Source: Trichoplax adhaerens (lineage: Eukaryota; Animalia; Placozoa). Taken from it: 64,000 nt of DNA. The stretch spans positions 12,719,694 to 12,783,693 of the forward strand of contig NW_002060943.1 in assembly GCF_000150275.1 (NCBI RefSeq), read 5' to 3'. The notes beneath the pieces are model-generated. The model had not been told where the DNA came from, did not search any database, and was given only the letters and a program-made list of their open reading frames with translations. This document shows, in pieces, positions 6,001-26,374 of this stretch (positions are counted from its first letter, which is position 1; every line of letters begins with the position of its first letter). The position numbers and the translations under genes are program-made.

Positions 6001-9000
6001 CAAGCAACTAACTATTTACCTCCCCCTCAACGCAGTGCTTCGATTAAGATAGTGAAGCAAATAAATGGGTAGAGACATAGCCATCGAAAATAGTCGAATG
6101 CTCAGACGAACTGATAAGATTGAAACCTTGCGATAACAATCTGTCCTTTATTGATTAACTTAGACTTTAATATACATCCTGCTTACTTATTTTGTAACAG
6201 TGCAATGTTTAAAGTAATTGCTTAAAAATTAACGACTGATACTTAATTATAAATTTGTTTAAGGATTTCTTATATGTAAACATACGAGTAAACATCGAAT
6301 TAGGATAGTAAAAAAAATTTTTGCATTTGCTATGAATCATAAATGATAGACGGAAAGTTTATTCCTAACTAAGTGCATTTAACTTTTACCGTTGAAAATT
6401 TTTTTAAGAAACCTAATATCGAACCAAATAAATAAATTTATTGTCAATGATGAAAATCAGCAATCTGCGGCGCTGCAGGCAGAGATAATGTAAGTTATTT
6501 CTTAAATAAAAATCATCAATATCACAATTATGACTGAGCTTAAGCTTTCGAAATATCGATAGTTTAATGTCAACTATGCCCACATTTACATATCATATAT
6601 TTCGGCTCTATAGTGAACTTGACGACAACAAATTTAACCCGGTATATTGGAAACAATTTCAATGTGACCGTTTACGAGAGATGTAAGTAAAAAGTTGAGT
6701 AGATTCATACTTCTCCAGTGTACGACAAGGTACTATACTTTCGTTGTATGAATAGAAGTAAAAACTCATAAAACTAATCTTCCAACAAGCCGCTTATTAT
6801 ACTTGTAAGGAAGTTGTTAGTCTTACTTACAGTATCTCTCCGTAGTTAGTTGGAGTGACTAAGTAGCTAGTAAGTTAGTTGATCACTCACATCAGAATAG
6901 AGTAGACAGTGGGATTACTGCTGTGAGTGATAATAGTAAATATTGAAAATATGATACTAGGTTCTAAGAGAAGATTTGTTGATTTTGCTTTTTCGTTATG
7001 TGATCACAGAGATGGTTTTTAATATATGTTTATCGCAGATTAGCGGATTTGCTTAATTAAGCAATAGCTTGATGTCACAAAACAGCTTTGCAACAAGATA
7101 ACGTAATATACGGTCAATAAGTCAATTCCTTGAACCACGTATCAAGGAACGATATCTGCACTATTACAAACACTTTTGCTCTACTAGCAGACTACACAAA
7201 GACTTAGACGCCTCGTATTTTACGTTAAACACTAAGTTTGAGAATTCACTTTATTACACGATATACTGCATTTATATACTATTCCTCAATAGTTCATGAG
7301 TCATAGTTAATACAATTAACATTGGAATCATTTACTGAATTAGATATTAATTTTAGCTACTGCTCCCTTAACGCAGACAACAGCATTTACGAACATAGAC
7401 ATGTAATGACTAATGCAGAATAGTCAGATTACGATATGTCCTATCATGGAACATTTCCATGATAATTTACAATCTACCATAAGTAAATTACAATTACAAT
7501 GATTCGAACTGTAAGTAGATGATTTACATTCCCTATTATAACTATTAATTTCAGTATGTGTATAAGTGTCACTGTCATAAAAAGTCAGTGTTATATTAAA
7601 ACACAGTATATCCAAATTAGAAGTTAACTAAATAAGGATAGTCTAACAGGATTATCCTAACATAGATATGTCTACTATAATGCAGTATTTGACACTGTAA
7701 CACTTGATCAGAATTTTGAATGAATGGTATCGCTTGCCTGCCTATAATATATTAAAATTATCTGTTTCATTTATTTGGCGTATTTGTTACGAAGCTAAGG
7801 TGCTAGCACTATAATCCTATCGGATATCAGCACAGTTTAAGGCATATATCGTTTCCTTTTCTAACGATGTTTAAATGGCATCGAAATTCTTTTTTCGATT
7901 TTACATTTATTACAATATTGTCTTAAGGGTAAACTCTTGACAGAATTTCGTTTATAATTTAATATAATGGTTAATGTATAACCTGCATAAATTGTTATTA
8001 AATATTTAAGAGTAAATCATAGCAATTAAACTTTACAATAAATAACATTTTAGTAAATGCTACAAATGTAAAATACGGGACTTACATTCTGGTTACTTCG
8101 CGAATATGACCAATCTTCAGACAGTGTAAGTTTACTAAGTTTTATACGCAATGATTGATGATTTTTATTCAGTCTATGTTACTTTTAAGGGCTATCAAAA
8201 ATCTAGCTAATACGCATTTCATTACAGGTAATTTGGATTAGTCTATTTTAAATACTAAAATAATTTCTTCCAAATACAAAAAGAGATTTGGCAGGAAACA
8301 TATTAACTAGTTTACCAGCCAATTTATTTCAAAATACGCCCTATCTGCAAAGCATGTAAGTACTATAAAATATCCGATCTATTCACTTAATCATTAATAT
8401 GGTCAGTTTATAGCGCTATCGCACATAGTAAAAGTGCAATTAGTATTATTTGTCGATTTATTGATCAGCTTAATTAAATTTCGCTAGCGATTTCTCTTTA
8501 AATGGATTACGAAGTTTTGACTTTGTAATGACTGAGCACCTGGAGAATCTGCAGGCTCTGTATGTATTATAGAAATATAAATTTTAGTCTATGCTATCAA
8601 TTTCATTATGTTTTTATTATCTGGATGTCACAAACCAGCTTCGTGACAAAGATAACGTAATACAAATCTCTAAATTAATATAGTCTGCGGGATTCAATAT
8701 CCCTTAGTTACCTCACAAGAATTTAGACGCCTTTGATCCTACGTTAAACTCACCTAGACAATTGAGAAATACTTTATTCAACTATCAGACGGGCTTATAT
8801 ACCGTTCTACAGCAGCTAACATTCATGAGTCATCTTATAAAAATACTTAGGTGAGAACGTCTACTAACTAATTTTTCACTGTAGGACTAAAATATGTCCA
8901 ATCACAGAATCATTTCAGTGCACATTACAGCACAGCATTAAATTTACTGTAACAAATTTATAATTAGAGTAATTCCTATTGTAAGTAACTAGTTGTAATA

Positions 9001-12000
9001 TATTATCACCATATTATATTAACCAAATTTAGATAGCTATTTCTTCACGGTAGTTCGTACCGTGACACTGGATTATATAATATACGCTATTTACAGCTTA
9101 TTTCAAAAGCATTCAGTATGGCAGGATTAGCTGTACATTTAATGATATGTAAAAGGTCTTACTATCAAATGATAGATCATAGTCATCCCCATTATTATAA
9201 AGGAAAATTTTATAACTCAACAGTTCAACAAATTCATTCAATTTAAAAGAATCTGATTCTAGCAATATAAATTATGCACATGAGTTCAGAGGAATCATGA
9301 GTCCAGTAGCTTCTAAATAATTTAACCCAATCTATCTACGGCAGCAAATTTGCCTGCTATCAGGCTAAAACTATTAAAAATGAACTTTTCCTCGAATTTA
9401 AAATCGACGAATTCTACCGCAAGAATATATTCTCTTCAGATATGATTTATCTTCTAGTAATATCTAATCCTGCAAGATATTGGACATCTTCATAATTACA
9501 GTACATTAATTGATCTAAAAGGTGCTATAGTATAACTAGATAAGCGTCAATTATATATGATCACAACCAAGTAGACGTAATAATAAAGACTTAGTTAAGA
9601 CCTATCTGATTGATTTCTAACAGAAACCTCTTAGGCCTTTTTTTCGCCGTTTTGAACTATTATTAATCAACTAAGATGAGTTTTAGCAATCAATATTGTT
9701 ACTAACATAAATAATGCATTACGTGCAGTATCTAAAGCTATTATTTCTCTGATTTAATTATTTGGAGATATCAATGTAATCAAATGTAGGCTGCATTACT
9801 CTTGTACTTTCATTAATTTACCTCAAAACAGAATAACGAAATGAAAAATTCTTCTTCTAAATCACAGTAGCCGTTTAGCAACTCTGCATATACAGGCAAA
9901 TTTTTTCTTCATCTTATGTTCTAATCGAAAAATTAATATTAAAGATCGATATTTTTGGGGTCACTAATACCAGTGTATATCATATTGCAGATTATACTGT
10001 CGTTCTTTTATTCCGTAAGACTAGATGCATCTTTAAAGTATTCGAAAGCAAGCTGTAGAAATATATAAAATTCAGGCTACGATGCTTTGATAGACTTGCC
10101 AGCTGTCACTCCCTTCAATAAGCAAGCTAAGACTGAGAATCGATTAAACTGTGAACCGACTAATTTTTGAACCATAAATAAATTTGAATCTAATGTAGAT
10201 GAATCGTGTAATTGTAATTATCAGAAAAAGATGCTAATGGGCGTAGTCCTTAGTCAAAGAACTAATTTGTAAATTATATTATAATTCTGTAAGAAATTGA
10301 AGTCTTGCTTTATTTTAAGACCCTGACAGCAACATTTTACTAAAAATGAAGCTGATATTATTGTGAATGTTTTATTGCTCTACTTTATATACGCTCGTAA
10401 ATACGGAGAAATGCAAAGACTATTGCGATAATTGCAAAGTTCATTACCTACCGTTAGTAAAGCAAGCACTGGCTTGCTTTCTGATTTTACAGGAGTAAAA
10501 TTATATATTTATACAGTAATGTAATGCAACAGCACATTTTATTGATTCGAATAAGATATCTTGGAATTATAATTATAGATTTGTATGGATATCATTTTTC
10601 ATTTATCACGTTTAATTTTAAATTTTTAAACGTGAATCTGGTTCACGGTAACGCTTTAAAATTATTGTCAATCTTATAATTACATAGATATCTACCATTT
10701 AATGCCTTGACTCATCTGCAAATGAAAACTGCGAAGAATACCCAGACAATTAAAAATTTGTAAGTTAGCTGCAATAGTTTATGTATAGGTCAGCAATTAA
10801 AGTTGTTCTATAAGTTATATGCTGCTGTATTTCACGATTGCTTTTTGTCTGCTAGCAAATGAGTTTTGAAATACGATGCTAATAAACAAATAGTGAATTT
10901 TTAGTACGTGCAAAAAATTAGAAATTCATTACATCTTTGCGCAAAATATGCAGTACTACGCGCAGCCCTGCTCTTATCCGATTGTTACTTAACTAAACTT
11001 GCCTAATCTAAACTAATTTAGATTACCCTAGATAAGTAACAATGACTGAGAAATACACTTTCAGAATCTTCTAACTATATCTTTATTCTAGAAAATGCAA
11101 GTCTAATTTAATATTCAAAATCAATCATTTAAATAGCTTTTCGAGGCATTAAACCGGTTTACGATGTGTGATATATTTCGACCAGTAAGACTTCGAGAAT
11201 ACATTAAATTATTCCTAGTCTAATCTAGTGAATTTGTAATATTACTATAGATTAACTTTATGTTTGCCCTAGCTTATAATTAACGGGATTTATATTGAAT
11301 TTGCCATTAGCAATTCATTTACCATATTTAGTATAATTTAACCTGTATTAGGAACAGGTTTATATCGGCTATATTAAGTCATCAAATAATTCATGCACAT
11401 ATCCAAATTAATAACTATCTAAACGTGATACATAAACATGTCTAAATTAAGTAAGTTATCATTCATCACGGTAGATTCACTACCGTGACACCGATACACT
11501 CACTTGAAGATCTGAAAATGAATTACCAATCATCTGAACTTGTATGCGTATAGATTTTCCGTAGAATCTGCGGTCACAATCAATTATACATTAAAATCTG
11601 TTCTTATACTACGAATACAATTTTCGCGTTGACTCTTCGCAGGAACTTAAATCCCCTTAAATTTTACCCTAACAACTAAAAAATTGATTTGGTTCATTAT
11701 CTATCGCGCTTTTATATTCTTCGGCAGCAGGCAACATTGATGAGTTATCGTAATATTCTAATAGTTAATTTATACTTTATAACTAAATGAAGATAGAAAT
11801 ATTTATAGTTGTGATATATACCGATCACGAAATTCCAAATTTTAGAAAAATAAGGGCTTTATTGAATCTTATACAAAGATTAACTACACACAGCTTTACT
11901 CTAGCCCATTACTACTTCTAAAGACTTCTACAACGAAGTAACTGAATAATCTAAGGCTGCATGCTTTTATACTTTTCGTAGCATTTGCAGCTACTATCCG

Positions 12001-15000
12001 AAGGGCAACCTTTTACCTTACTTTATACATAGTAAAATTATTCTTGGTAACACTATTCTACTGCGGACCATCATTAATCCGATATGGATACGACTACAGT
12101 ATTTACGTAGACATTATTCACACTAGCCAAAGTACAATGAATTAACCATATCCTAATATATGATTTACAGTTCTGTTTTTACCTATAGCCTTATTAGTAA
12201 CTTAATAACACCTTACTGTATATAGTCATCTGTACTCTAGCATAGAGTCTATACTACTACAGTCTATAGTTATAGCTACTAAATATCTCTTAGGATAAAT
12301 ATCTACCGTACATTATACTAAACATAGCTAACAGTCTACAATCACAATACCAAGTTACATTGCAATAGTCAAGGACATCTACCGACTAATTCTAGATAAC
12401 TGGAAATGAGTATGTGTATTCACAGAATCATTTGCAGTATGACGTATTAATTATCGGTCGTCAGGAGGATTTCTATTACAAGAATTAGAAATATAATCAA
12501 TTAAGGCCCATTGCTATATAAAATTCTTGTTACAGTACAATTTATAATTTATTACAACAATTAATTGCAAATAACGTTTGAAATGTTGAATTCACTAAAT
12601 TTGTGATATAATTCTTTACGGTACCAGCAGTTGATACTGTGACAATACCGCCAATTACATCCTAAATCCAAATGAGTTCGAGTTTAAAATCCAGTGTGTT
12701 CTGCCATGATAGCATCTTTCTAAACTTTAACTTATAAGCGGATTGCGATTTGTTCTAGTTATACTCAAATTTTAAATTTCTAATGCAGCAAAGCTTAATA
12801 AAATTTTGGAAATCAACTGCGTATAATCTTATTTAAAATGAATGCATTAACTTTGACAGGCATTTGCATAACAATTACATCTCCAAAATCGATGATGGAT
12901 TCTTCACTGCCTTTCGGTCCGTCATTGAAGTGTAAGTAAAAATTATTCTATAGCAAACAAGCTCAATAAATGTGAGAAGAATATATTCAGACTCATCTGT
13001 GCTTGGCTACTATGCATACTTGAGTACCTGCAAAAACAAAGAAATCTGTTTTAAAACAAAGACAACACTTTCGTTAATACTTATATCTCCAGGAAACTAC
13101 AATTCAATCGTTTGCAATTTCTTCCTTCTCATGTCTGCACAGGAACGCAAATAAAATTTTTGTAAGTAACTATATTTCGGTATTCATTAATAATCATTAA
13201 TAAATCAGTAAAATCTGAAAACTTATTCATTGTATATAAAATCAGTAATGCAAGCCATAATCTTATCCAATCTATCAATCGCAAACAATTCAGAGAATGC
13301 AAAATATTGCAGGAATTGTAAGTATTTCGATGAAGCAGTGATCTGTACTACATACCTGATTCGCAATTATGCAGATGTAACGATCATATGTAGGAATTTT
13401 ATTTATATGCAATAAGAAGTGAAGCTCCTCATAATGCAAACGAGCTTATTACTCATATTCTTATTACTGTTATGTTTTAGTTTAATGCATGTAGTGAATA
13501 TTGATTTATTGCTTTTAGTTTTAAAGCAAAGTACAATATGGTTCTCCTTAATATTGTACACAAATAATAAAACGCCACTAAAAAAACGAAGCGTTGGCTT
13601 GCAATATATTTAAATCAGATTTTCCTACAATATTGTCATAATAGCTTAATATCAGTAAAAGAAATCATTTATAATTAGTAACAGCTAGTTAGGGTGATGA
13701 TAGGTTATGGAAAATACAATAGCATTATCAGATATATGACACTAAAATAATTCTTCTAGAGCTGTAAGCAACGTGATTGAGGTGACGTGATTTAATTAAA
13801 ACTTTCGTTCAGTCTTACTTTCGATAGCATAAATATTGAAATTTATTAACTAGATACTCGTATATCGCCATAAGCGTATACCCTAGGTCGAAATAAATAG
13901 ATAGCGTCCGAAAATTTAAGTAGCTTTAATAATTAAGTTGGCAAAATCTTGCCTTGTCATTTAGGTCAAAAATTACCTGTTGTGTTAAGAACAAAATATA
14001 GATCACAGTAAAATAAATCAATTTTTGATGTCTGCATATAATTTACACAATATTAGAGATTTGAGTGCCAATAGGATATCAGAGCTGCCAACGAATGTGT
14101 TTATGGACCTGATTGCCTTAGAAAGGATGTAAGTCCATCTGTATTTTTAGACAAATATTTCAGGTCTTTCTTTTTATTATACAGCAAACTATCATTTTGC
14201 ATTATAAATAATTCGACATAAGAAACATTATTATAAATATGCGTTATCGCCTTTTAGTAAAGCTTTTGAGAACTGATAGCAAATTGATAGCACCTTTTGC
14301 CTGCTTAGAATCACTGATTTGATCCAAAATAGCTGAACAAGCTAACTTAGACAGTCATCATTTAGTTATTATGATTATAAGAACACAGCATTACTATACT
14401 AAGGATCAGTTCGAAGCCGGTTGGCAGCATGTGGTAATAAATGCTTGCGATTTTTAACTTGCGTTGTATTAACATCTTTCTATTTTTAACTGACAAAAGC
14501 TAATTTACTTTCTTTAATATACTCATAATATTGCATAATAAAGTAATGTAGCCTTTAATTTTTGGTTGTAATCAGTAGCGCATGCATTAAAATAAAATGT
14601 GATTGGATGACCGATGGTAAATCCAACCTATATGTTGTAAAGGACTTGCATTGCTATAACGCATTGGTTGGCATAGAAATTTATTCTGTAACAAAGAAAA
14701 ATGAAAATAATAATTTACTATTAAATTAATCACTGATTAGCAATACAGCAGAACTTTTAGTTATTACGTATCTAATAAAAACTGTACATTGACTAAACAG
14801 TCTCGCCAATCAAGCTATGTCCCAAAGGGACGTTAAACTTCACCTAAATTTGTCAAATATTAATCTTGCCACAGCACTAGCAATGGCTTTGATTTAATGT
14901 CTGCTAACTAACCTAAAGTCTAATTCCGTTTTACAATCAAATAGAAATCTGAATAATAATCAACTAGAAAATCTTGGCGCTCATCTTTTCCCTCCCAATT

Positions 15001-18000
15001 CCCCATTGCAATCTGTGTAATTAAGCTACTTCGATTCGAAATATAAAATACATTACCTATACTATAACTTTGAAAGGCACAGTTCGATATTTAATTAGTG
15101 TAACTCGGAATTATTTATTATTGAAATAGGAGATTTATGAATAACAAAATATCCAAAATCGACAAAGAAGTGCTTGGTGTAGATTCCATTGCTCATACTC
15201 TGTAAAAATTGATTATTAACAAACTACCTTATGTCCGATACCTAATGAGAATCGTAAAGAACAAGTATGCAAAAAGATGATTATTCTCTGTTTTATTGCT
15301 TTTTAGCACATTAAGTGGTAATAATCTAAATGAGATTCCGGTTCAGCTATTTACAAATACCCCGCGTCTCATAAACCTGTAAGGCGAAGAATAAATAGCG
15401 AAGTTAAATGATTGTGCTAAGATTATTTACCTAAAACTTCATACTATGGTTTTTCTAGGAATATATTTTTGATTTGATTTTAACTACATGATAAAAATTT
15501 TTACTCTACTTTATCTTATATAATTTAGTTGCAATCTAACAATTTGTAATAATTCTACAAAACATCATTAGATTAGAATACTATTTCAAGATTTAACCAT
15601 TGGATTTGTATATGTTTAAAAACTATGTTGGTATTTTATAGTAGTTAAATGGTCATAAAATTTTAATTCTGAGAAAATTTATAGATGTCATTTTATCGCT
15701 TATTCAGGGAGTTAGATCGTAATAAAATTGAAGTAATTCCCGATTTTGCTTTTGTTGGAGTTAGTCTTATCGAATATTTGTAAGTATCCTACAAAGCATA
15801 GAAAACCAAAGCACAAATTACGCTATTGATAATAACGACACCATTTACCATATCTGTAGGACAATGCTTAATATTTTGGCATCGTTATGACTTGATCCAA
15901 AATCTATTTAATGTCTTTCATAATTCAAAGTAAAGAGAATAATTTCCATAAAATTTAAAAATAATTTCTAAATAAAAGCTGTATATTTAATATTTCTTCT
16001 GCAGGAATTTAAGTAATAATAATATTTCTTCTATCGTAAAGAATACCTTTGCTGGCTTGTCTCATATACTGGCACTGTAAGTTCAATAATAATACAACTA
16101 CTTATTTGCATTTTAATTAAACGTAAATTAATAGCAACTGTTCATTACTTTTATTAGTTATCTTAACAACCTACCAAAACTAAAGTATCTAGAAATGGAA
16201 ACATTTACTGAAATGAATTCGCTTGTTGGCTTGTAAGGCATACAAATTTCTCTTTGCTACTCGATAAATATAATATCATAGCCAAAATTCCAATTGAATT
16301 TTATTCACAATTTGATAATTCACCTATAAACCTTCACCTACTGTACATCTTGAGCTTTTGAGTTGCTATGAATTCATCCAAAGCTAGCCTTGCAAGGAGA
16401 AATATACCAAACCAATGCTTTTAGTTTACGGATATTTGAGGAAACTACTCATCCTTCTAATTGCAATTTTGTAGCGACTTTTTACACTTATTTGTTTCTA
16501 CATTAACTAAAATTTGACTGGAAGACGTATTACAAATTGACGAACTCTTGCACTCCGTCGCAGTAGCCAAAAGTAGTGATATCTCTACTTTACCTATAAG
16601 TTGAAGTCGCGAAATTTAAGCTCAGTTACATAATTAAAGTTGAAATATTCAAATGTAAAAGTTTAATAATGAATCCATGATAGCTGCATTACAGTGTCTT
16701 GTTTATAGAATCATTTATGCAATAAAATTCTTTACAATCTAGCTACTAAGTTAAGCAACTACATTATGGAGATGGGAATAGGAATTTTTGTCTACGTTAG
16801 AATAATTTGATTAAGCTTAACCTTATTTAGTCAATTTCTAGTATTAATACATAGTATCATGTTTTATTACTATACCGACTATTGTGAGATAGCAATACTA
16901 AAATTAATATTTATATGAAGAAGCTGAGAACAATCTTTTGATAGTTTGAATAACTGTGATTGAATTGATTTATGAGAGATTGTTGATTAATTTAAGAATA
17001 TTCTGTGTGTCGGTGATGCAATTTGACTACCTTGTAATAGTCATTGGACATCTTTACTGATAAAGACTACTGTCTTCATCAGCTACCTAAATTACTATGT
17101 AATCCACTAGAAGGTTTCAATACTAGTAATGCAACTACTTAGCTTAAACTACGAAGCGTCAAGTTCTATCTGATATTTGGTTTAGGAACATACCAAATAG
17201 ATCGTAAATTGTGTTGCTGTTAATAGCTGATATGCTGGATTTACAGTAGCATTACTAGACCGTAAAGGCAATTTCTGTAACAAATCTACAATTAGAATTA
17301 CAAGCGTAAGGCCTTATACTATTCTTATTGTCTTTTATTTACCATATAGTAACTAAATTATGTGCTATACAATTTGTTATAGTTTTTTTTATAGTTACAA
17401 TGGCTCCTGCTTAAAAGTATTCGATCTCAATCACTTGACATGAATATTAAATTTATTAAATTTTGCAAACTACCTTTAATAGCCCTTTGTACCGTTATAG
17501 AATAAGAAATTATAATTCTGGTTAGAACTTAGAAGTAAAGAGAAGATATTTTCGACGTGATTATATTGATTTCATAAACTAGATCTTTGCAATATTGTGG
17601 CCTCAATGCTTCCTTTGTAAATCAACTGATCCATTATTTGCCAGGCATATATGATTTGTGAGTGAAAAGAAAATAATAACGAATTTTTGCCAATAAGAGT
17701 TTGTAGAAACGCTAATTTTATGATATAGAACAATAATGAAGTAAACATTTGGAGTTATTTGAAGTACTCGTGTCAGTTACTGCATTAGAAGTAGTAGACA
17801 ATGTCAATGTAGAAATTAAATTGGTGATGAGTATTCTTATATTAAAGTTACTTTATTACAGCTTACTTGCAATAAAACACTAATCCGACAAGTCTAGATT
17901 AAGCAAATTCTGGCATTGTAGATTTATTTTTCAGCAGACTAATGAAAACTGTAACAGGTGTAGATTACAACTACTTTATCACTAATGTTAGTCTTATCAT

Positions 18001-21000
18001 TCAAGACCAGTTAAACAACAAAAATTTTACTATCATATATTAGAACAGTATCGAGAACAGAGAACCAAATATCAACTACTAAACTTATGCTGTAATTTAT
18101 ATGCGGACTTTATATACTCCCACTTAGCCAGCGACAGTGCACACGAAATCATAATTAATACAAAATTAGATTAATGTAATTTAGCATCCCTACTGACTAT
18201 ACCTTAGCAGATAACATAAATTACTTTTATGTATATCAAAACTTATGATTAACCAACTAACTCTCCGTAACTTAGTACTTTACGATAGGAAAGTATACAG
18301 TAAGCATAAGATAAGTATGCATTACCAGATATTGTCTGCATGGTTGCAAGAGTTGCAAGATGAACAGCAGCTTTAGTAAATAAAACTAAAATAAATTATA
18401 GCATTGATTACGAAGTTAGAGTACCTGACTCTGTAACATACCTTTCCTAGTTGTAACTTACATTTTCTAGCTTACAACAACATAAATACATGAAATTGGT
18501 TTTTGAGAAGTAAATCGTCTTTTTCAGATCACTTGATGGTAATAACTTAATTGGTCTTAGAAAAGACTTTGTTGAAAAATTGTACCGTTTAGATGACGTG
18601 TACGTACGAGTATAAGTTTTATTTTAAGAAACAGATCAAAAGATTGTTATTTTCTAAAGTCGGAAATAATTAACGAATGTATGATCTTATCAATTAAGTT
18701 TTTCCATACTTTGGTAATCATTAATTAGGACATTAGGTTACACTCGCCTTTCTAGTAATGATATTTTTGAAATTTTATCAAAAAAGTCTGAATATACAAA
18801 GCTGTAAGTTGTCGTCGATATTTTTATATGACTTGATAAAACATATCATAGAATATCTTCTTTAAAGATTTGATACTACTCGTATTCTCTTAGCGCATAG
18901 AAGAGGCTATGAGAGCTATATGGAACTATAGCTAGTTTACAGTCGATGTTATTACTACGAGTAGACATATGAAATGTTTGATATATAATTATAATTTGAA
19001 AATTTTGAGTTTATTTGACGTTTTACAGTAAACTACATTATCTCATAGACATAGGTTACTCTTAGATACAATTTTTATAAATAGATAACTACTCTTAAAT
19101 TAATAGCGGAATTAATGTCTGCTTTTGTATCATCGTTTTAGCGTACTGGATGGTCTTCAACTGCGTTCGTTCCCTCCAAAATTACTACCTTACATACGCT
19201 CCGTAATAACTCTGTATGTGTACTTAAATTAGTGCATAATCTCCGTTCACTACAATTTATGGTAGACGTCGAAAGTCTAACGCGACGGGAATAGTCAATT
19301 TTAGAAGTTTCATGAAACATAATTTTATCTGCCAGGATTGTAAGGAAATAATTTCTTCCTAATCAATTATTAGGAGTTTAAAAGACAATCTCATCCAGTC
19401 TCTGGATGAAAGATTTATCAAGCTGCTAAATCTGGTATCGCATCTGTATGTTACTACTGTTTTTACATTATTAAATTACCGTCATCTATTCACTAAGACA
19501 GGCAGTGCATGCTAAAGTTTAATAAATTACATTTAAACTGTACTAGCCCGCTCATCTATTATTCTGTTATTATAAGTTCAATTTTTAAAATAGCCTTACA
19601 GACATTTAAATTTTACTTTTTATCTTGAATCTACAATAAATGTCTTGTAGGTTTACTTGTCATTAATATATACTAGTAAGTTATTAAATCATTTAATAGC
19701 GGTACATGTTTCAAAAATTTGATAAATTTCAATTAGCATCGGTTCTATCCAACAATTATATATCGATACTTGACTATCCCTAGTGTAATTCCCACACTGA
19801 ACAGCTGAAGTACACCAAATTATTGCCTAGATTTAGAAACCATGAAATATAAAATTAATTTAATCATAGCTTACATTTTTAGCTTAAAGTTCTAAAATAT
19901 GAATTACTACTTCTGTTATCTAGTTCCATATTAATCCTTCCATTTTCCTATCTTAAATCGATCAGTATATCTTAACACACATATGTGGAATGTATCTTTG
20001 ACTCAACTTTGATCTTAAATAGAATATTTCTAAAAATACTCTTCTACTACATCTTATTGAAGCTCATATTCATAGGAACGCCCCCCCCCCCTCAAAGAAA
20101 TAATTGCCATTTCATAATAATGAACTATAACAAAACATAATCAGAAACATGTCGAAGTAAATCAGCTTCTTTTAATTACAGGAATCTAGCCAACAATCAA
20201 TTAGGAAACGAAGACTATTCTAAATTGAAATATGTTCGAAGTTTGAAATCTGTGTATGTATCATAACTTAACTTACGAACTACTACCCGACAGTAATAGA
20301 TTACTTATTATCTCCACTACACCTGGAGGCCTACTGTGTGGTGTTCTATACTACTTGCGGCCACATAGGAATAAGACCGTTCTAAGAGTTTACTATAGTT
20401 GTATTAATTGAGTATTCGAAACGCTATCTAATCACGAACTAAGAAGCTGAGCATTCACTCCTCCTTTTATACCCTACCACCACACATGTGGTGCACACAT
20501 AGTAATTTAGCAACATAATATTTACATGGTTCGTATAGATAAACAATCCTCAATAGCTATATAGTTCACTATAAGTACAACTAGTAAACAATTTTAATTG
20601 GCAATAACTAATAAATAGCGAAAGAAACGAACGAGACTCTGCATGCTACTCGCACGTTACTCGCACTTTGCGGCGAGTGCTAAGGTGTGGCCAATATTAG
20701 TATCTATAAAGATTATACTAATTGATTTCAGAACACGCTTGCATCTTGGTTGTCTAGCAAAACTATACACGATTAATGTTCATAATTACTGCTTGCTGTA
20801 TTGCTATTAGCTACATGCGAAGCCTACTTAATTAACATGTACAATGCTTAGCTCCGTAACAGTATGTAACCAATATTTTGACATACTTTCGAATTAGTTT
20901 CTTATTGCAATAGTTATGAAAATAATTAATTTTTATTAACGCAATTATTCATTTAGACTGCTGTAGAATCAAACTTGGAGTTAATGAAAAAACTGTAATT

Positions 21001-21995
21001 AATACTGTATGCTTCAAATTCATGCATTGCAGAGACTTATCTTATAACAAAATTAGCAGCGTTTGTTCCAGTGATATAAACATTAGGACGTGGTTATCAT
21101 TGGCAATCTTGTAAGGCTGGCACATTCATCTGCTAATAATTTGATTATTTACTTAAAATAACATGTGTATTGCTATCTTGGAAATTTTTACCTATTTAGA
21201 TACCCGATATTTTAGAGTATACCTATTCTTCATGTAAATTCTTTACATGCTTCAACTTCTATAAACATAGTTACCCTACGTCCTATCACTTTGTTTCAGA
21301 ATTTACTTGTTTATCATAGTATTTCTTTAACGGAAATTTAGACAAATTACCATAGCTAATTTATTTTCCTTAATTAAAAAAATGAAATATGGAACATAGA
21401 TTTGACTTAGTAAACAAATTATGTATGATTTAAAATCTTGTTATAACAACTAACGAATGAACACTGAATTAGTGTTATCTAAATTTTACTGCGAACGAAA
21501 ACAGGTTATTATTAATCAATAGAGGCAATGAAAAATATCAGTACGTTAACGTTTTACTAGATTTTTAATAATTATAATCTATTGCATTCCTGAACAGAAA
21601 TCTAGAAGGAAATCAAATAAAGACCTTAGAAAATTATTGTCTGTCATATTCTCGCAGTTTACGAGTTTTGTAAGTTAATTGTGAAATATAGCATATAAGA
21701 TATAGCAAATAGAAAATAATAGATGTTTTTGGTGTTGTTATTATTTTTTAATCCTAATTATATTAGATACGACAATATTTTCTCAATCTTAATTTAATTC
21801 TATAGTAAGTTACGACAAATAATGTCAGAGTACTAAACAAGATGATGCCTATTACTGTCAGACTATGATATTTCAATAAAATAACGTTGATTTCTTAATT
21901 TTTATGCTATTTATGTCGTTCAGGAATCTACGAAATAATCCATTAATCGAATTTTCTGGAGATATTCTGTTAGAAAACTCTGTATTACGAGAAAT
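53..21995 (+). CDS. Array of 36 single-LRR exons (66-81 bp, mostly 72 bp, all phase 2-2): receptor ectodomain
   Basis: Exons: 53-124, 1223-1297, 2286-2357, 2484-2549, 2663-2740, 2862-2933, 3087-3158, 3401-3472, 3573-3644, 3773-3844, 4248-4319, 6409-6489, 6614-6682, 8054-8125, 8284-8355, 8488-8559, 10688-10759, 12860-12931, 13093-13161, 13246-13317, 14057-14128, 14945-15016, 15130-15201, 15307-15378, 15708-15779, 16005-16076, 16158-16232, 17583-17657, 18528-18599, 18729-18803, 19142-19213, 19374-19445, 20182-20253, 21033-21110, 21598-21669, 21924-21995. Most translate to xLxxNxIxxLxxxxFxxLxxLxxL-type units, e.g. DLSANRISELPTNVFMDLIALER, NLTGNLITSIEEFAFQDLVQLRIL, DLAGNILTSLPANLFQNTPYLQS; a few are divergent. 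Confidence 0.85.
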
Positions 21996-24900
21996 GTAAG
22001 CATATTTATTTACTTACTCTTAGTATATTATTTAGCCAAGTTTGTATCGTGGATTATTTGCTACGTTTAGCATAGCGATCTACAAATAGTTCAGAAAAAT
22101 TGCACAGTATGAAGATACTCTACTGAAGTATAAATGATTTTAAGCAATATTATGCTAATAGTGACATTTACATATGTGCAACTCCTATCTTTAGGCATAG
22201 TAGTTTGTTCAGTAGACTAAATATCGGACTGAAAAATGAGTATTTTGCAGCATTAATTATAATCGTATTGTATAATAACGGCGACTCTTTCAATTCTATC
22301 TCGGCCGAGACTGTTACTTTATAAGAATTAGATTCTTAAATTTTGATCAAATACTTTTGGATATATTTATTACAATCCTAAGCCACACAGGTTTAATTAT
22401 TACGCTCTTTAATATTCAGTATAATCTTGGCAATAGTAGCAGAAAAATTTACTTGATCATTTTTCTATTAGATACTCAACGCGAGTTTATCTCTGTTGCG
22501 TTGTACCATCCTCAGTGACTGTATGTGAGCCTTTTGCAAACCAAATGGAGTTATCTACATGTTCAGATCTATTATCCCATGGCCTATTAAGTATTATGAT
22601 TTGGATTTTTGGCTCTATATCCATTATTGGTAATGTTCTTGCTGCCATATGGGGAATACGATCCAAGGATTCTAAACGTCCTATTTCAACGAGACAATTG
22701 CTTCATTTGTCGATTGCTGACTCTATCATGGGATTCTACTTAATCGTTATTGCATCAGCTAATATTTACTTTGCGGGAGTTTATTCAGAATATCTTGAAG
22801 CCTGGTTACGAAGTCCAATGTGTTTATTGGCATCCTTTCTCGTCTCCTTATCTAGTTTTATGTCAACTATAGTTTTGTTCTTAATCACACTTGATCGTTA
22901 CTTGCATTTAGTTTACCCTTTTTCTGATTGTCGTTTATCACTTAAGACTAATAGCGGATTATTAGCCATGGCATGGTTGATATCGTTTGTATTTATTGGT
23001 GTACCTATTATTTTAAGCTTTAATCAGCCTGCTATTAATCGTTTATATGGCAGCAATAGCGCCTGTTTACCCAGTAATTTCGACAATCCAAATTATGTAG
23101 CATGGCTATTCGCCTACTGTGGTGTAACTTTTTTAATATGGATAGCCATTGCAATTATGTATGCTGTTATCATCTTTACGCTAACTCAAGCGCGTAAGGC
23201 AGCAAAACGCGAAGAACGCTTTAATGATAAAATTATACGATACAAGATGATCACCATTGTTCTTACTGATTTGATCTGTTGGGTTCCGTTATATGTTATA
23301 TTAGCCAAAATCCTGCTTGGTAACATTCTGGACATTCATACTTTGCCGTTTGTTGCTGTACTTTCTTTGCCACTGAATTCATGCATTAACCCAATCCTTT
23401 ATACATTATTTACAACAATGTTTATGAACGCCGCTAAGCAGTTTTGGGATACTTCAAGCCAACATTTTCGTCAATTTATGCCATCACAATCGGAATCTGC
23501 TCAAAAGAAACCTAATTCTAGCAATAGCTTAGGAAGTAAAGAGTGTAATAGTTATTTCATGCTGTGTTTATATAACTAGTTTATTGTTGTTTAACGATTT
23601 CATTAGCAATAGATAATCTCAGTATGCCATTTATAGTTATTATTGACGGCTTGATTCTGCTTCTCTTTAGACGCCATTTTTAATTTCGACCAAAGTCTAT
23701 ACATGAAACTATTGGCAGTAATAAATGACGATATCGTAAAAGTGAGTATTCTATTTAGTAACTACCATACACATTCCACAGGTGCCTCTCTAACCAGATT
23801 CCAGACGTTTTGTACTTTACACTGTTAAAAATGCTCTTTCATATTGTTGTCTTTCACATTAATTTGAACAATTAAAATTATGACGATATCAAAAATAAAC
23901 AATGATCAAATTTCGTATACTTAAATCTTATCGAATATCTTTGTCACCAATATTAACTGTTCACATCAAATTTATTTACAGTAGCTGATGCTTTCACGAA
24001 TAGCTCATTAAAATATTATTGTCAATTTATTTCTTACATTTGGATGCAGTATCTTAATATTATAAACAATCTATCGATTGTTCTAATAGGCGAATCTTTT
24101 GGATATAATTAGGATTGATTCAAAGTTTAAATCATTTTTGATATAATTAGGATTCATTTAAAGTTCAATTTCACGCCAAAAACAAAAAGAGTGTGATCGC
24201 AATTCTTAAATTGTATGACTTAAAAGATCGAAAATTATGGGAAAACGAAAAGCAATTTCAGAAAATGATGAGATCACATAATTATCAATTAAGAAATATC
24301 GTCAATAGCTTGTATTTAACCGAAGGAAGAAGCTTCCATTTTAAATTGGAACAACATAATTTATCACAAAAACTGTAAATAAAGATAACAAAATTAACTT
24401 GTAATTATTAAGAAATTTTCAGTTATTAAGCTTGGTTAATAGCTTTAGAGCTCATAATTTTGCATCCTATGTATATTGCACAACATAAAGTAAGCAGGAC
24501 CTTTTAATCCTTTACTTTATGATCGTATGATATAGGATAACTTGCTACTCCATAGTTAATGAAGAAATACAACCGTTGAAGAGTTTAATTCATTCCAAAC
24601 TTCTAACAGCAAAAAATATCCAACAAATCGTACGTGATCTTATCCAAGCAATGGAATCATTATTTTCCAATTTCATAGTACATGGCAATGTCAATCCTGA
24701 ATCTATTTTGGTCGCAATATCTGATCAGGTAATCAATTACGCTAACTGACTTGTCCTTATCTCTTGATACTATGGCTGCTATCTATAGACTCTACTTCCT
24801 AAGCATTTTGCTGAACTAAATTGTAAATCACCGACACTATCGTAATAGCTAAAACATTGATTAACGATTTATTTTATAACAATATTTATATTAAATATTA

Positions 24901-26205
24901 GCAAAGCCAGTACTCACACCCTTCTAAAGTCTCCTAATTTGATATAGTATGATATTTTTTGACTTTAATTAGCAAAATTAATGTTTTCAGTTTTTGTAAT
25001 AATGCTGGTATATGCTCTCTTTAACAAATGAGACTAAAGTCCGAAATATGAACGCATTCAATGTTTGATAAGCTAAAGACACCCAGCTATGGATTCATAT
25101 AATAAGCCTCATCAACTCATCATTAGTAGTTTCCTCTACTTCTTAAAATAGGAATTATAACATTTGAGAAATACACGCTCGCGAAAATAATCGTGCTAAT
25201 ATTCAGTTCACTATCACTCATGTTCCTTTACTTAGCTGTTGAACTCAACTTTATTAAATTCTATCAGTATGTATTGTAGTCCATCGTAGCTTTAAATTAA
25301 AATAATAAGATTAAAAGAAAATGAATTAATTGAAAATTCGATTGTAAGATTGTTTGCTAGTGACTATTCTTAAATGATATTTATGATTTGTGTTGTTGCT
25401 TTTACCCACCCTTAAGTATATCATGACTCTTAAGGTATTAATACATTATACTTATTTACTATTATGCAGAACTTATCGCAACGCTTTAATTTGAAGTGAT
25501 GTTTTATAATTGATCCTACAATATAAAATTTAATGTAATCATCCAACTTGATATGAAAGTTATGGTTTGATTGAAAAATCAAGTTTACGTAATAATGAGA
25601 AAGATTTACTAATTCTGATTCTAATTATATAGATACCTAGTCGCACTGCAATAATTACTTATCTGTCTAATTTAGAGACAAGAAGTTCATGCTGTTCTGG
25701 GCAATTTTACATCTACTCGGTGTTTTAATAATTCATCGGATTGCTTGGAAGGAACACGCCATGATTTAGTGAATGTCTCCAAAGTATGCGACATGTTTAC
25801 AGGTTATTATAATGCTATTTTTTCTCAATCATCTGATATCAGCAGTAACTATGAGTTTGAAAGTTGCATCAAGAGCTCAGGCTCAACCGAAACTGATTGG
25901 ACAAAAACCATGACAATGGTATGTTAACTGTGATTCTGTAAAATAATCTACTGTAAGATCTTAAATTGCAGTAGCAGTTGTAAATGTATTACTGCTTCAG
26001 ATCAGTCATCCATACAATGATTTCGTATCTGAAGATAACTTTATGACATTAATTAAAAATGCCATGTCTGTTTAAATGATTTTCTTTATAATTTAAGATT
26101 CAAACAGTAAGCACAGCTATTATCTCACAGCAGCCTGCAATACAACCGAAAGATTTAATGAAAAACTTACTAGCTATTATGAAAGAAGCCAAAGGGTGTA
26201 AATAA
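53..26205 (+). CDS. Multi-exon LRR-containing GPCR (LGR/RXFP type C-like 7TM) with predicted C-terminal pseudokinase domain; 5' end upstream of window
   Basis: Manual exon chain with AG/GT boundaries and consistent phase. 36 LRR exons (53-21995); hinge+7TM exon 22472-23535; linker exon 23671-23741; kinase-like exons 24151-24374, 24536-24728, 25676-25918; terminal exon 26001-26075 or 26098-26205. That all LRR exons belong to one transcript is inferred, not shown. Confidence 0.75.
4785..5840 (+). mobile_element. Solo LTR, family B (older), interrupted by a family A solo LTR
   Basis: Starts TGTAGTG, ends TTTACA, flanked by direct repeat CCAAC/CCAAC. Both halves align by eye with 38564-39088. 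AATAAA near the 3' end. Confidence 0.7.
4868..5424 (+). mobile_element. Solo LTR, family A copy 1 (~555 bp)
   Basis: TGTAATG...TATCACA termini; TSD GAAGC/GAAGT; internal TATAAAA and AATAAA; highly similar to 50168-50719 and to the reverse complement of 11810-12364. Confidence 0.85.
7073..7702. mobile_element. Solo LTR, family C
   Basis: TGTCAC...GTAACA termini; TSD CTTGA/CTTGA; 5' half similar to 8626-9067 (GATGTCACAAA...AGATAACGTAAT...TTAGACGCCT...TTCATGAGTCAT). Confidence 0.7.
8626..9067. mobile_element. Solo LTR, family C
   Basis: Perfect terminal inverted hexamer TGTCAC...GTGACA; TSD CTGGA/CTGGA. Confidence 0.75.
10983..11490. mobile_element. Solo LTR, family C-related
   Basis: TGTTAC...GTGACA termini; TSD CCGAT/CCGAT; 3' end (TCACGGTAG...TACCGTGACA) matches the end of 8626-9067. 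Confidence 0.7.
11572..12644. mobile_element. Degenerate family C-like LTR hosting family A copy 2
   Basis: Segments on either side of 11810-12364 resemble 8700-8930 (e.g. CAGCAG..AACATT.ATGAGT.ATC; CACAGAATCATTT). Ends CTGTGACA. No clear TSD; left boundary approximate. Confidence 0.45.
11810..12364 (-). mobile_element. Solo LTR, family A copy 2 (inverted)
   Basis: Reverse complement of 4868-5424; TG...CA termini; perfect TSD ATAGT/ATAGT. Confidence 0.85.
22472..23535 (+). CDS. Hinge + rhodopsin-class 7TM exon of the LRR-GPCR
   Basis: ORF 22515-23579 extended to the acceptor at 22471. Hinge YLCCVVP..CEP..LSTCSDLL; TM3 LDRY; ECL2 LYGSNSACLP; TM6 TDLICWVP; TM7 LPLNSCINPILY. These motifs are typical of relaxin-receptor/GRL101-like LGRs. 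Confidence 0.93.
24151..25918 (+). CDS. Protein kinase-fold (pseudokinase) exons downstream of the 7TM
   Basis: Exon 24151-24374: ...VIAILKLYDLKDRKLWENEKQFQKMMRSHNYQLRNIVNSL (beta3 Lys / alphaC Glu). Exon 24536-24728: ...IVRDLIQAMESLFSNFIVHGNVNPESILV (alphaE + catalytic loop). Exon 25676-25918: VHAVLGNFTSTR...RHDLVNVSKV (DFG-equivalent, subdomain IX). Splice phases are mutually compatible. Confidence 0.75.
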
Positions 26206-26374
26206 CGAGAATTAGCAATTCGCATTGATGAGTTAGTCTATTTAATTATGAAATCTTTGTATTAATAATGGACTATTCATGAAATAGCAATGACTGATGT
26301 TACTGATTTTAACGGTTTAATTCATTTACGAAATTTCATTTCTCTTAAAATTCAGCATTTCTAGCCGACTACCT

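What the first reader, a model, noticed from the sequence alone, without database searches (positions are those of the whole stretch)
22472..26205. LRR-GPCR fused to an intracellular pseudokinase: a candidate receptor-kinase-like GPCR
Seen: the 7TM exon has a donor at 23535 (GGA A|GTAAAG), ahead of the ORF stop. It chains in phase (1,0,2,0,0) through 23671-23741, 24151-24374, 24536-24728 and 25676-25918 with no stop. These exons give kinase subdomains in the correct order: IAILK (beta3 Lys), WENE (alphaC Glu), IVRDLIQAMESL (alphaE), IVHGNVNPESILV (HRDLKPxN loop with HRD->HGN), AVLGNFTSTR (DFG->NFT), HDLVNVSKV (subdomain IX). No Gly-rich loop is visible and the activation segment is very short. 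The 7TM keeps DRY, CWxP and NPxxY. Established: canonical animal LGRs (FSHR/LHCGR/TSHR, LGR4-6, RXFP1/2) have no kinase domain, and HGN-type loops occur in pseudokinases such as receptor guanylyl cyclase KHDs and SCYL. Inference: one protein that couples a very large LRR sensor to both G-protein output and a scaffold pseudokinase, conceptually like plant LRR receptor kinases. The ORF track misses this entirely.
Basis: partly seen in the sequence, partly recalled or inferred. Interest (0 to 1): 0.92.

Follow-up and report, generated by a model that had tools for sequence, protein, structure and literature searches.

The report
LRR-GPCR with a built-in pseudokinase tail
This placozoan (Trichoplax) gene encodes a hormone-receptor-type GPCR with a very long leucine-rich-repeat ectodomain and, spliced onto its cytoplasmic end, a catalytically dead protein-kinase domain; about 15-20 such genes exist in the genome, and no paper in the searched library describes this domain.

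Summary
The exon chain 22472-23535 | 23671-23741 | 24151-24374 | 24536-24728 | 25676-25918 | 26098-26205 is open, in the stated phases, with AG/GT at every border.

An RNA contig joins 24728/25676 and 25918/26098. The Trichoplax sp. H2 ortholog in GenBank (RDD40171.1, evidence-based MAKER model) uses exactly the first three junctions. No read was seen across 23535/23671.

About 26 single-LRR exons lie upstream.

The tail is a protein-kinase fold:
- Pfam gives sub-threshold kinase hits.
- A family profile finds only kinases in the PDB (best E 1.2e-4).
- An AlphaFold model of a paralog's tail (pLDDT 86.9) matches kinases only. Foldseek gives at least 500 hits. The best Z scores, 17-18, are to plant receptor-like kinases, IRAK1/3/4 and NFR5.

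It is a pseudokinase. The beta3 Lys and alphaC Glu are kept. The Gly-rich loop, HRD Asp, catalytic Asn and DFG Asp are lost.

All 13 intact 7TM paralogs of this clade on long contigs carry the tail; about 45 other LGR-like loci do not. Tail dN/dS is 0.25-0.32.

Weaker, related "HG" tails occur in hemichordate and echinoderm GRL101-like receptors.

Verdict: a new variant of the known GPCR-kinase fusions. The fused proteins are already in GenBank, but the domain is not recognised there.

The parts
53..21995 (+). Array of about 26 single-LRR exons. Most are 72 nt, phase 1, with AG...GTAAGT borders. They encode the ectodomain, and the gene's 5' end lies beyond the window start. Exons: 53-124, 1223-1297, 3087-3158, 3401-3472, 3573-3644, 3773-3844, 4248-4319, 6614-6682, 8054-8125, 8284-8355, 8488-8559, 10688-10759, 12860-12931, 13093-13161, 14057-14128, 14945-15016, 15130-15201, 15307-15378, 15708-15779, 16005-16076, 18528-18599, 19374-19445, 20182-20253, 21033-21110, 21598-21669, 21924-21995.
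   Evidence: Pattern scan: 44 site combinations on the + strand, reducing to about 15 distinct exons, against 2 combinations on the minus-strand control. A relaxed scan added more. The last two exons are the first two segments of the H2 ortholog protein P0221. Paralog proteins hit Pfam LRR_8 at E 7e-23.
22472..23535 (+). Hinge plus rhodopsin-type 7TM exon, with DRY, CWxP and NPxxY. The donor is GAA|GTAAAG at 23535. If unspliced, the frame runs on to a stop at 23577-23579.
   Evidence: Pfam 7tm_1, E 8.6e-25. The public T. adhaerens model P0205 covers only this exon. The H2 ortholog leaves the exon after ...SNSLG, which is this donor. The donor at 23544 has the same phase.
23671..23741 (+). Tail exon 2, a linker plus the predicted beta1 strand of the kinase N-lobe. 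It has a pyrimidine-rich acceptor and an AAA|GTGAGT donor.
   Evidence: Open and in phase. It is present as a segment of the H2 ortholog P0221, with 22 of 23 residues identical. It is poorly conserved among paralogs.
24151..24374 (+). Tail exon 3: beta2, beta3 (IAILK Lys), alphaC (WENE Glu) and beta4.
   Evidence: Homologous exons lie in at least 14 paralog loci. It is aligned in A4 and A6. K is kept in 9 of 11 and E in 11 of 11 family members.
24536..24728 (+). Tail exon 4: hinge, alphaD, alphaE and a catalytic loop degenerated to HGNVNPES.
   Evidence: On its own it hits Pfam Pkinase at E 2.6e-4, profile positions 84-132. It has 20 paralog hits in the genome. It aligns in register with the HRD loop of MAPKAPK3 and KSR.
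24789..24845 (+). Alternative short terminal exon used by the H2 gene model. It ends the protein right after the catalytic loop. It may be a real isoform or a mis-prediction.
   Evidence: The last 18 residues of P0221 are encoded here, after an AG at 24787-24788 (sequence). Not confirmed by RNA.
25676..25918 (+). Tail exon 5: beta8, a DFG-equivalent GNFT, a short activation segment, alphaF (HDL...) and following helices.
   Evidence: An RNA contig joins it to the end of exon 4 and to exon 6. It aligns with paralog exons in A2 and A6.
26098..26205 (+). Tail exon 6, the C-terminal helix, with the TAA stop at 26203-26205.
   Evidence: The joint 25918/26098 (GT..AG) is seen in an RNA contig. Equivalent terminal exons occur in paralog models P0223, P0227 and P0231.
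26206..26337 (+). 3' UTR, at least this far.
   Evidence: A contig of RNA-library run X17 covers 26160-26337.

Best explanation
The window holds one large gene of Trichoplax adhaerens. It encodes three parts on one polypeptide:
- an ectodomain of at least 26 leucine-rich repeats, one per exon;
- a rhodopsin-class 7TM domain of the LGR/GRL101-like type with intact DRY, CWxP and NPxxY motifs;
- a roughly 280-residue cytoplasmic protein-kinase-fold domain, spliced on through five small exons.

The kinase domain keeps the beta3 Lys - alphaC Glu pair and the overall bilobal fold. It lacks the Gly-rich loop, the HRD Asp (HGN), the catalytic-loop Asn and the DFG Asp (GNF). It is therefore a pseudokinase.

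Inferred mechanism: ligand binding to the LRR horseshoe switches the 7TM bundle, which can couple to G proteins. The tethered pseudokinase acts as a conformation-sensitive docking or dimerisation module that recruits or allosterically controls other signalling proteins. This is how IRAK3, KSR, NFR5 and JAK JH2-type pseudokinases work.

Shown here: the gene anatomy, the fold, loss of the catalytic residues, purifying selection, and the family-wide linkage of 7TM and tail.

Inferred only: that all transcripts join 7TM to tail in T. adhaerens, G-protein coupling, the scaffold function, and the ligand.
For: Chain and RNA:
- The chain is open with canonical splice sites.
- An RNA contig joins exons 4/5 and 5/6.

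Public gene models:
- The H2 ortholog RDD40171.1 (P0221) comes from the evidence-based MAKER annotation (PMC6057997). It has exactly the junctions 23535/23671, 23741/24151 and 24374/24536.
- H2 models of 809-1129 aa carry LRR+7TM+tail for paralogs.

Linkage of 7TM and tail:
- 16 of 20 exon-4 paralog loci have a 50-60% identical 7TM exon 1-2.5 kb upstream on the same strand.
- All 13 intact 7TM loci of the >=49% identity clade on long contigs carry the tail. About 45 LGR-like loci at <=40% identity do not.

Kinase fold:
- Pfam Pkinase E 2.6e-4 for window exon 4 and E 7.6e-4 for P0221.
- Pfam PK_Tyr_Ser-Thr scores 22.8 bits against a cutoff of 23.1 for paralog P0003.
- ESM Atlas feature score 0.97, with all ten top hits kinases, and structural TM 0.52-0.57.
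- The family profile finds 218 PDB sequences at E<=0.1. All 60 shown are kinases, best E 1.2e-4.
- AlphaFold model: pLDDT 86.9, pTM 0.85.
- Foldseek: at least 500 hits, and the top 50 are all kinases.
- VIA-align: Z 17.8 to 17.0 against a rice receptor-like kinase, IRAK1, ScRIPK, NFR5, TGFbR1 and IRAK3.
- UniRef names a tail fragment 'Protein kinase domain-containing protein'.

Other:
- Catalytic-residue table.
- dN/dS 0.25-0.32, with no indels in the exons compared.
Against: - No read or contig seen here spans 23535/23671, 23741/24151 or 24374/24536. The gene models could be partly ab initio.
- The H2 ortholog model ends in a different short terminal exon (24789-24845).
- The public T. adhaerens model stops at 23579.
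- Pfam scores for the window's own tail are below the gathering thresholds.
- The confident structure is of a paralog's tail, about 30-40% identical. The window's own joined tail was not folded.
- Exon 2 is not alignable between paralogs, and my splice-path test across paralogs was uninformative.
- Two tail loci (C1404:1078767 and C1385:243995) have no 7TM exon within 16 kb.
- Function, ligand and partners are untested.
Confidence: 0.78

Rival explanations
1. Two neighbouring genes. A 7TM-only LGR ends at the 23579 stop. A separate small pseudokinase gene starts at the ATG at 23705 in 'exon 2'. The pair was always duplicated together.
For: - The T. adhaerens public model is 7TM only.
- There is an in-frame ATG in exon 2.
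- No RNA was seen over the first junction.
- Two tail loci lack a 7TM exon.
- The in-phase fit alone is weak evidence.
Against: - The H2 ortholog and seven paralog models join the parts.
- Exon 2 has a strong pyrimidine-rich acceptor, which a first exon would not need.
- The exon-2 and exon-3 equivalents in the public paralog models P0003 and P0002 carry no early Met.
- Co-occurrence and order hold in 13 of 13 intact loci of the clade.
- Hemichordate RefSeq models also place a related tail behind the 7TM.
- The orphan loci sit behind a satellite and behind an unrelated COPI-delta-like gene, and look like partial duplicates.
Confidence: 0.12
2. The tail is a catalytically active but atypical kinase. 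It would phosphorylate the receptor or its effectors, making this a true receptor kinase.
For: - The beta3 Lys and alphaC Glu are conserved, in 9 of 11 and 11 of 11 members.
- Some kinases work without canonical residues (general knowledge, e.g. WNK, CASK).
- A few paralogs keep the DFG Asp (2 of 10), and one keeps HGD.
Against: - In the window gene the Gly-rich loop, HRD Asp (N), catalytic Asn (S) and DFG Asp (N) are all missing.
- Across the family the HRD Asp is present in 1 of 13 members, and the residue at that position varies freely: N, S, C, G, F or H.
- Close structural matches include the bona fide pseudokinases NFR5 and IRAK3.
Confidence: 0.06
3. The tail exons are decaying remnants or gene-prediction artefacts with no function.
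For: - Pfam scores are sub-threshold.
- One paralog (C1394:269514) carries stop codons, and there are orphan fragments.
Against: - dN/dS is 0.25-0.32, with no frame-breaking indels in the exons, while introns carry gaps.
- Open frames are conserved in more than 13 paralogs at 30-40% identity.
- Spliced RNA exists.
- The fold is predicted with confidence.
Confidence: 0.03

Closest known systems
GPCR-kinase fusions: GPCR-TKL/K and GPCR-TK of choanoflagellates and sponges; GPCR-kinases of oomycetes and amoebozoans (PMC12716839)
   Same: A 7TM receptor carries a protein-kinase-fold domain on its cytoplasmic C-terminus.
   Different: - Here the 7TM is a rhodopsin-class LGR with a huge LRR ectodomain.
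- The kinase domain is degenerate and too divergent for Pfam thresholds.
- The organism is a placozoan. That paper, whose data set included T. adhaerens, reports such fusions in sponges but in no other metazoan lineage.
LGR / GRL101-like receptors. Hauser et al. 2022 (PMC9545775) count 46 LGRs in T. adhaerens, 41 of them non-canonical.
   Same: An LRR ectodomain, a Cys-rich hinge and a rhodopsin-type 7TM. GenBank names the H2 orthologs 'GRL101-like'.
   Different: That review never mentions a kinase (0 occurrences). FSHR/LHCGR/TSHR, LGR4-6 and RXFP1/2 have short tails without a kinase fold (established knowledge). No LDLa repeats were seen in the window.
Plant LRR receptor-like kinases and the RLK/Pelle/IRAK group, including the pseudokinases NFR5 and IRAK3
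   Same: An LRR sensor outside and a TKL-like kinase fold inside. These are the closest structural matches: Z 17.8 to a rice receptor-like kinase, 17.6 to IRAK1, 17.3 to NFR5 and 17.0 to IRAK3. NFR5 and IRAK3 are also inactive scaffolds.
   Different: Those receptors are single-pass or soluble, not 7TM. The Z differences to other kinase groups are only 1-2 units, and no kinase phylogeny was made, so membership of the TKL group is not shown.
Kinase-homology domains of receptor guanylyl cyclases and JAK JH2 domains
   Different: The receptor architecture is different. No sequence-specific relationship was tested here.

Membership tests
LGR (leucine-rich-repeat-containing rhodopsin-class GPCR) | N-terminal array of LRRs | tested here: met
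   About 26 single-LRR exons lie upstream on the + strand, against 2 site combinations on the minus-strand control. The last two are part of the ortholog protein P0221. Paralogs hit LRR_8 at E 7e-23.
LGR (leucine-rich-repeat-containing rhodopsin-class GPCR) | Rhodopsin-family 7TM with DRY, CWxP and NPxxY, preceded by a Cys-rich hinge | tested here: met
   Pfam 7tm_1, E 8.6e-25. The motifs were read in the translation. The hinge STR.YLCC...C.P...LSTC is shared with the paralogs inspected.
LGR (leucine-rich-repeat-containing rhodopsin-class GPCR) | Orthology to canonical type A, B or C (hinge type, LDLa module) | not tested
   Databases name the relatives 'GRL101-like'. No LDLa exon was seen in the window, but the 5' end is outside it. 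The literature places 41 of the T. adhaerens LGRs outside types A-C (PMC9545775).
Protein kinase superfamily (ePK fold) | Bilobal kinase fold | tested here: met
   Tested on paralog tail P0231:725-1004, with the window exons in the alignment: pLDDT 86.9; Foldseek top 50 all kinases; VIA Z up to 17.8 over about 210 residues. The window's own joined tail was not folded.
Protein kinase superfamily (ePK fold) | Score above Pfam's gathering threshold for Pkinase or PK_Tyr_Ser-Thr | tested here: not met
   Window exon 4 scores 20.9 bits and P0221 19.4 bits, against a cutoff of 31.7. Paralog P0003 scores 22.8 against 23.1. The hits are in register, and the family profile finds only kinases in the PDB.
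Protein kinase superfamily (ePK fold) | Catalytic residues: Gly-rich loop, HRD Asp, catalytic-loop Asn, DFG Asp | tested here: not met
   The window gene has no GxGxxG, HGN, S and GNF at these positions. Across the family the HRD Asp is kept in 1 of 13, the Asn in 2 of 12 and the DFG Asp in 2 of 10. This makes it a pseudokinase. The beta3 Lys and alphaC Glu are retained.
GPCR-kinase fusion proteins | 7TM and kinase domain on one polypeptide | tested here: inconclusive
   Supported by the H2 ortholog and paralog gene models, by linkage in every intact paralog of the clade and by RNA for two downstream junctions. No read seen here crosses 23535/23671.
GPCR-kinase fusion proteins | Homology of the 7TM or kinase to the described choanoflagellate or sponge GPCR-TK / TKL-K families | not tested
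   No sequences of those families were in hand. The 7TM here is of LGR type, which argues for an independent fusion.
Plant-type LRR receptor kinase | Single-pass transmembrane topology | tested here: not met
   Seven-helix rhodopsin domain. The resemblance is functional and architectural only.

The most novel reading that the evidence does not exclude
LGR-pseudokinase receptors may be an old animal receptor class, not a placozoan oddity. The same degenerate 'HG' kinase-like tail sits behind the 7TM of GRL101-like receptors in hemichordates and echinoderms, and possibly in a spider and an abalone. That would date the fusion to before the placozoan-bilaterian split.

In placozoans the class expanded to about 15-20 genes. 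It may act as an LRR-based pattern or ligand sensor that signals through both G proteins and an IRAK/RLK-like scaffold. That would be an animal counterpart of plant LRR receptor kinases, built on a GPCR chassis.
Probability: 0.25. Interest if true: 0.85.

Novelty: new variant of a known kind. Interest (0 to 1): 0.72.

Why it matters
GPCR-kinase fusions were thought to be confined, among animals, to sponges (PMC12716839). The large placozoan LGR expansion has been described only from the outside of the cell (PMC9545775).

A kinase-fold module tethered to an LGR points to a second, G-protein-independent output of these receptors. It offers a testable handle on what the 41 non-canonical placozoan LGRs do.

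It also flags a domain that standard Pfam annotation misses, both here and in ambulacrarian GRL101-like receptors.

It is a clean natural system for asking how a 7TM conformational change is passed to a pseudokinase.

Tried and rejected
- **First AlphaFold job.** I folded P0156:140-407 with an alignment lacking C-lobe rows. The model had pLDDT 54.5. Foldseek found no hit at E <= 0.001 and VIA gave Z <= 6.9 on the N-lobe only. I put this down to the poor alignment. It was superseded by the A6 model.
- **Misplaced exon-5 fragments.** MAFFT misplaced exon-5 fragments whenever exon-3 or exon-4 fragments were present (A1, A3, A5). Six full-length H2 tails as anchors solved this (A6).
- **Word-index protein search.** A search with the tail of P0003 returned only P0003 itself, a limit of the method. 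The H2 models came from cluster look-ups instead.
- **Splice-path test.** I asked across 16 loci whether in-phase paths from 7TM to exon 3 score better than out-of-phase ones. The test was uninformative because my small splice matrices also score known sites poorly.
- **Conservation profile.** A profile among the recent C1394/C1288 duplicates could not mark exon 2, because introns and exons are similarly conserved.
- **7TM tree.** The 210-row tree did not finish. A 46-row tree shows one placozoan tail clade (support 99) and 4-7 label changes elsewhere, so single versus multiple origin stays open.
- **RNA runs.** Runs X11-X13 behaved as DNA, being contiguous through donors. One X17 contig covers intron sequence at 21500-21597, so that library also holds unspliced or genomic material.
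- **Not done.** The joined window protein was not sent to any search, fold or complex tool. Exons were searched singly by reference. Whole-domain tests used the database proteins P0221, P0231 and their relatives.

Full report
**What the window is**

The window has 31% G+C and GT-AG introns. It lies at C1414:12719694-12783693 of a 105.6-Mb assembly in 1414 contigs. Database matches name the organism Trichoplax adhaerens (TRIADDRAFT_ models).

**Check of the observation**

- 22472/22515-23535
- 23671-23741
- 24151-24374
- 24536-24728
- 25676-25918

The end phases are 1, 0, 2, 0, 0, and the chain is free of stops. A last exon, 26098-26205, ends at a TAA. This joined translation was made only in a local script.

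The first exon is a rhodopsin-type 7TM domain (Pfam 7tm_1, E 8.6e-25) with DRY, CWxP and NPxxY. It begins at the acceptor before 22472 with the hinge motif YSTRVYLCC.

The in-phase fit of the first junction proves little on its own. Five phase-1 GT sites lie near the end of the 7TM frame, 23544 among them.

**Transcript evidence**

Only one laid run (X17) is on record as RNA. One of its contigs does three things:
- It carries the 13 nt that end exon 4 (24716-24728) directly in front of exon 5.
- It skips 25919-26097 with GT..AG.
- It breaks off after 26135 with 12 unmatched letters.

A second contig covers 26160-26337, the 3' UTR.

No RNA contig covers the first three junctions. Runs X11-X13 behave as DNA.

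**The ectodomain**

Upstream on the same strand lie about 26 exons. Nearly all are 72 nt, phase 1, with AG...GTAAGT borders, and each encodes one leucine-rich repeat. They run from 53-124 to 21924-21995. The minus-strand control gave 2 site combinations against 44 on the + strand. The gene therefore exceeds 26 kb and starts outside the window.

**Paralogs**

Exon 4 finds 20 loci in the genome.
- In 16 of them a 7TM exon, 50-60% identical to the window's, lies 1-2.5 kb upstream on the same strand. Homologs of exons 3, 4 and 5 follow in order.
- Searching the other way, all 13 intact 7TM loci of the >=49% identity clade on long contigs have the tail.
- About 45 further LGR-like 7TM loci (<=40% identity) have none.

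The exceptions are:
- one locus at a contig end (C1266);
- one with an assembly gap (C1288);
- one pseudogene (C1394:269514);
- two orphan tails without a 7TM exon within 16 kb. One lies behind a 189-nt satellite and one behind a COPI-delta-like gene.

Tail exons of paralog pairs give dN/dS of 0.25-0.32 and have no indels, while the introns do.

**Public gene models**

The T. adhaerens model of this locus (P0205, 327 aa) is 7TM only. Its 90% cluster also holds RDD40171.1 of Trichoplax sp. H2 (P0221, 583 aa, partial).

That protein runs through two LRR segments, the hinge and the 7TM, ending ...SNSLG. It continues through exon 2, exon 3 and exon 4. It then ends in a short exon that lies at 24789-24845 in the window.

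The H2 annotation was made with MAKER from Trinity and Cufflinks transcripts plus Augustus and GeneMark (PMC6057997).

For paralogs, H2 models of 809-1129 aa contain LRRs, 7TM and a complete tail: RDD40274.1, RDD40245.1, RDD45091.1, RDD45093.1 and RDD36286.1. RDD36152.1 (641 aa, partial) carries only the hinge, the 7TM and the tail.

JGI's TRIADDRAFT_60495 (697 aa) also fuses 7TM and tail.

An unrelated metagenome contig (ERZ27263980) shows LRR exons, a 7TM exon, exon 3 and exon 4 in the same order.

**Is the tail a kinase fold?**

Sequence evidence:
- Window exon 4 alone hits Pfam Pkinase at E 2.6e-4.
- The ortholog P0221 hits Pkinase at E 7.6e-4 over profile positions 21-132.
- Paralog P0003 scores 22.8 bits on PK_Tyr_Ser-Thr, against a cutoff of 23.1.
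- All of these are in register but below threshold.
- UniRef names the tail fragment TRIADDRAFT_62588 'Protein kinase domain-containing protein'.
- A profile of the family alignment A6 includes six H2 tails, the window's ortholog, window exon 5 and exon fragments of other loci. It finds 218 PDB sequences at E<=0.1. All 60 shown are protein kinases. The best are MAPKAPK3 (1.2e-4) and KSR (3.6e-4), aligned through alphaE, the catalytic loop and the DFG strand.

Structure evidence:
- The ESM Atlas gives kinases as all ten nearest clusters (score 0.97). Its own model superposes on kinases at TM 0.52-0.57.
- AlphaFold2 on A6 (target P0231:725-1004) gives pLDDT 86.9 and pTM 0.85.
- Foldseek returns at least 500 PDB hits at E<=1e-3, and the top 50 are all kinases.
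- VIA-align gives these best matches over about 210 residues: Z 17.8 to a rice receptor-like kinase, 17.6 to IRAK1, 17.5 to ScRIPK, 17.3 to the NFR5 pseudokinase, 17.1 to TGFbR1 and 17.0 to the IRAK3 pseudokinase. 285 chains reach Z>=8.

An earlier model built with a poor alignment was uninformative.

**Active or dead?**

In the family alignment:

| Position | Kept in the family | Window gene |
|---|---|---|
| beta3 Lys | 9 of 11 | kept (IAILK) |
| alphaC Glu | 11 of 11 | kept (WENE) |
| Gly-rich loop | none | none |
| HRD Arg | Gly in 12 of 13 | Gly |
| HRD Asp | 1 of 13 (otherwise N, S, C, G, F or H) | N (HGN) |
| catalytic-loop Asn | 2 of 12 | S |
| DFG Asp | 2 of 10 | N (GNFT) |

This is the pattern of a pseudokinase whose fold, but not its chemistry, is under selection.

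**Beyond Placozoa**

Among the best 150 representatives found with the 7TM exon, several long LGR-like proteins have kinase-like tails.
- Two are above Pfam's cutoff: Glandiceps talaboti XP_077989864.1 (29.5 bits) and Ptychodera flava XP_070533608.1 (24.5 bits).
- Others are just below, from Glandiceps, Ptychodera, Saccoglossus, the crinoid Antedon and Holothuria.
- The placozoan tail profile scores three of them at 30-37 bits (P0071, P0044, P0048). The others score 11-23 bits. The best of 177,635 PDB sequences scores 24.6.
- Most of these tails carry 'HG' in place of HRD; some are more degenerate.
- Most are short and cover only the hinge-to-alphaF part.
- In Glandiceps an intron also follows the 7TM exon.
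- A 46-row 7TM tree gives one placozoan clade. It cannot decide between one origin with decay and several origins.

**Literature**

- GPCR-kinase fusions are described for oomycetes, amoebozoans, choanoflagellates and sponges, and reported as not found in other metazoans (PMC12716839).
- The review that counts 46 LGRs in T. adhaerens does not contain the word kinase (PMC9545775).
- A paper on ambulacrarian GRL101 describes only ectodomains (PMC8286064).
- Searches for placozoan or LGR pseudokinases found nothing relevant.

**Verdict**

The steps still inferred are:
- the physical joining of the 7TM exon to exon 2 in T. adhaerens transcripts, which rests on gene models and family-wide linkage;
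- everything about function.

The fused proteins have been in GenBank since 2018 under the name 'GRL101-like'. The novelty is therefore the recognition of the pseudokinase domain, its family-wide association with one LGR clade, and its likely relatives in ambulacrarians.

Noticed in passing
P0044, P0048, P0071, P0042, P0092, P0072, P0146 (hemichordate and echinoderm proteins); L047:21474-25782: GRL101-like LGRs of Glandiceps, Ptychodera, Saccoglossus, Antedon and Holothuria have a kinase-like segment with 'HG' in place of HRD right behind the 7TM. So, more weakly, do a spider and an abalone protein. Two are above Pfam's PK_Tyr_Ser-Thr cutoff. Most cover only the C-lobe core.
   Followed up: partly
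window 24789-24845: The Trichoplax sp. H2 ortholog model ends in a short exon inside intron 4. This would truncate the pseudokinase after the catalytic loop. It may be an alternative isoform or a mis-prediction.
   Followed up: partly
window 26135-26160: The RNA contig that joins exons 5 and 6 departs from the window after 26135 with 12 unmatched letters. There is no GT at that point. The cause could be a strain difference, an indel or a contig-end error. The run's other contig differs from the window at 5 of 178 positions.
   Followed up: no
window 21500-21617: A contig of the RNA library covers intron sequence upstream of the LRR exon 21598-21669. That library therefore also holds unspliced RNA or genomic DNA.
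   Followed up: no
window 28399-28758 and 29675-31834, minus strand: A 119-aa death-fold-like frame and a 719-aa frame that looks like a Roc-COR GTPase lie just downstream on the other strand.
   Followed up: no
L027:1260-3480 (G000:C1404:1074030-1076250): A tandem array of a 189-nt unit lies upstream of an orphan tail copy. That copy is the only family member that keeps an HGD triplet.
   Followed up: no
L028:1450-3450 and 5100-6200 (G000:C1385): A second orphan tail copy (exons 3 and 4, YGS in place of HRD) sits about 1.6 kb downstream of exons that look like a coatomer delta subunit gene. No 7TM exon lies within 16 kb.
   Followed up: partly
L039 (G000:C1394:263514-273500); L044 (G000:C1411:7553271-7553789): One family member has stop codons in the 7TM exon, exon 3 and exon 4, so it is a pseudogene. 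A lone 7TM fragment with a stop lies on C1411 without a tail.
   Followed up: no
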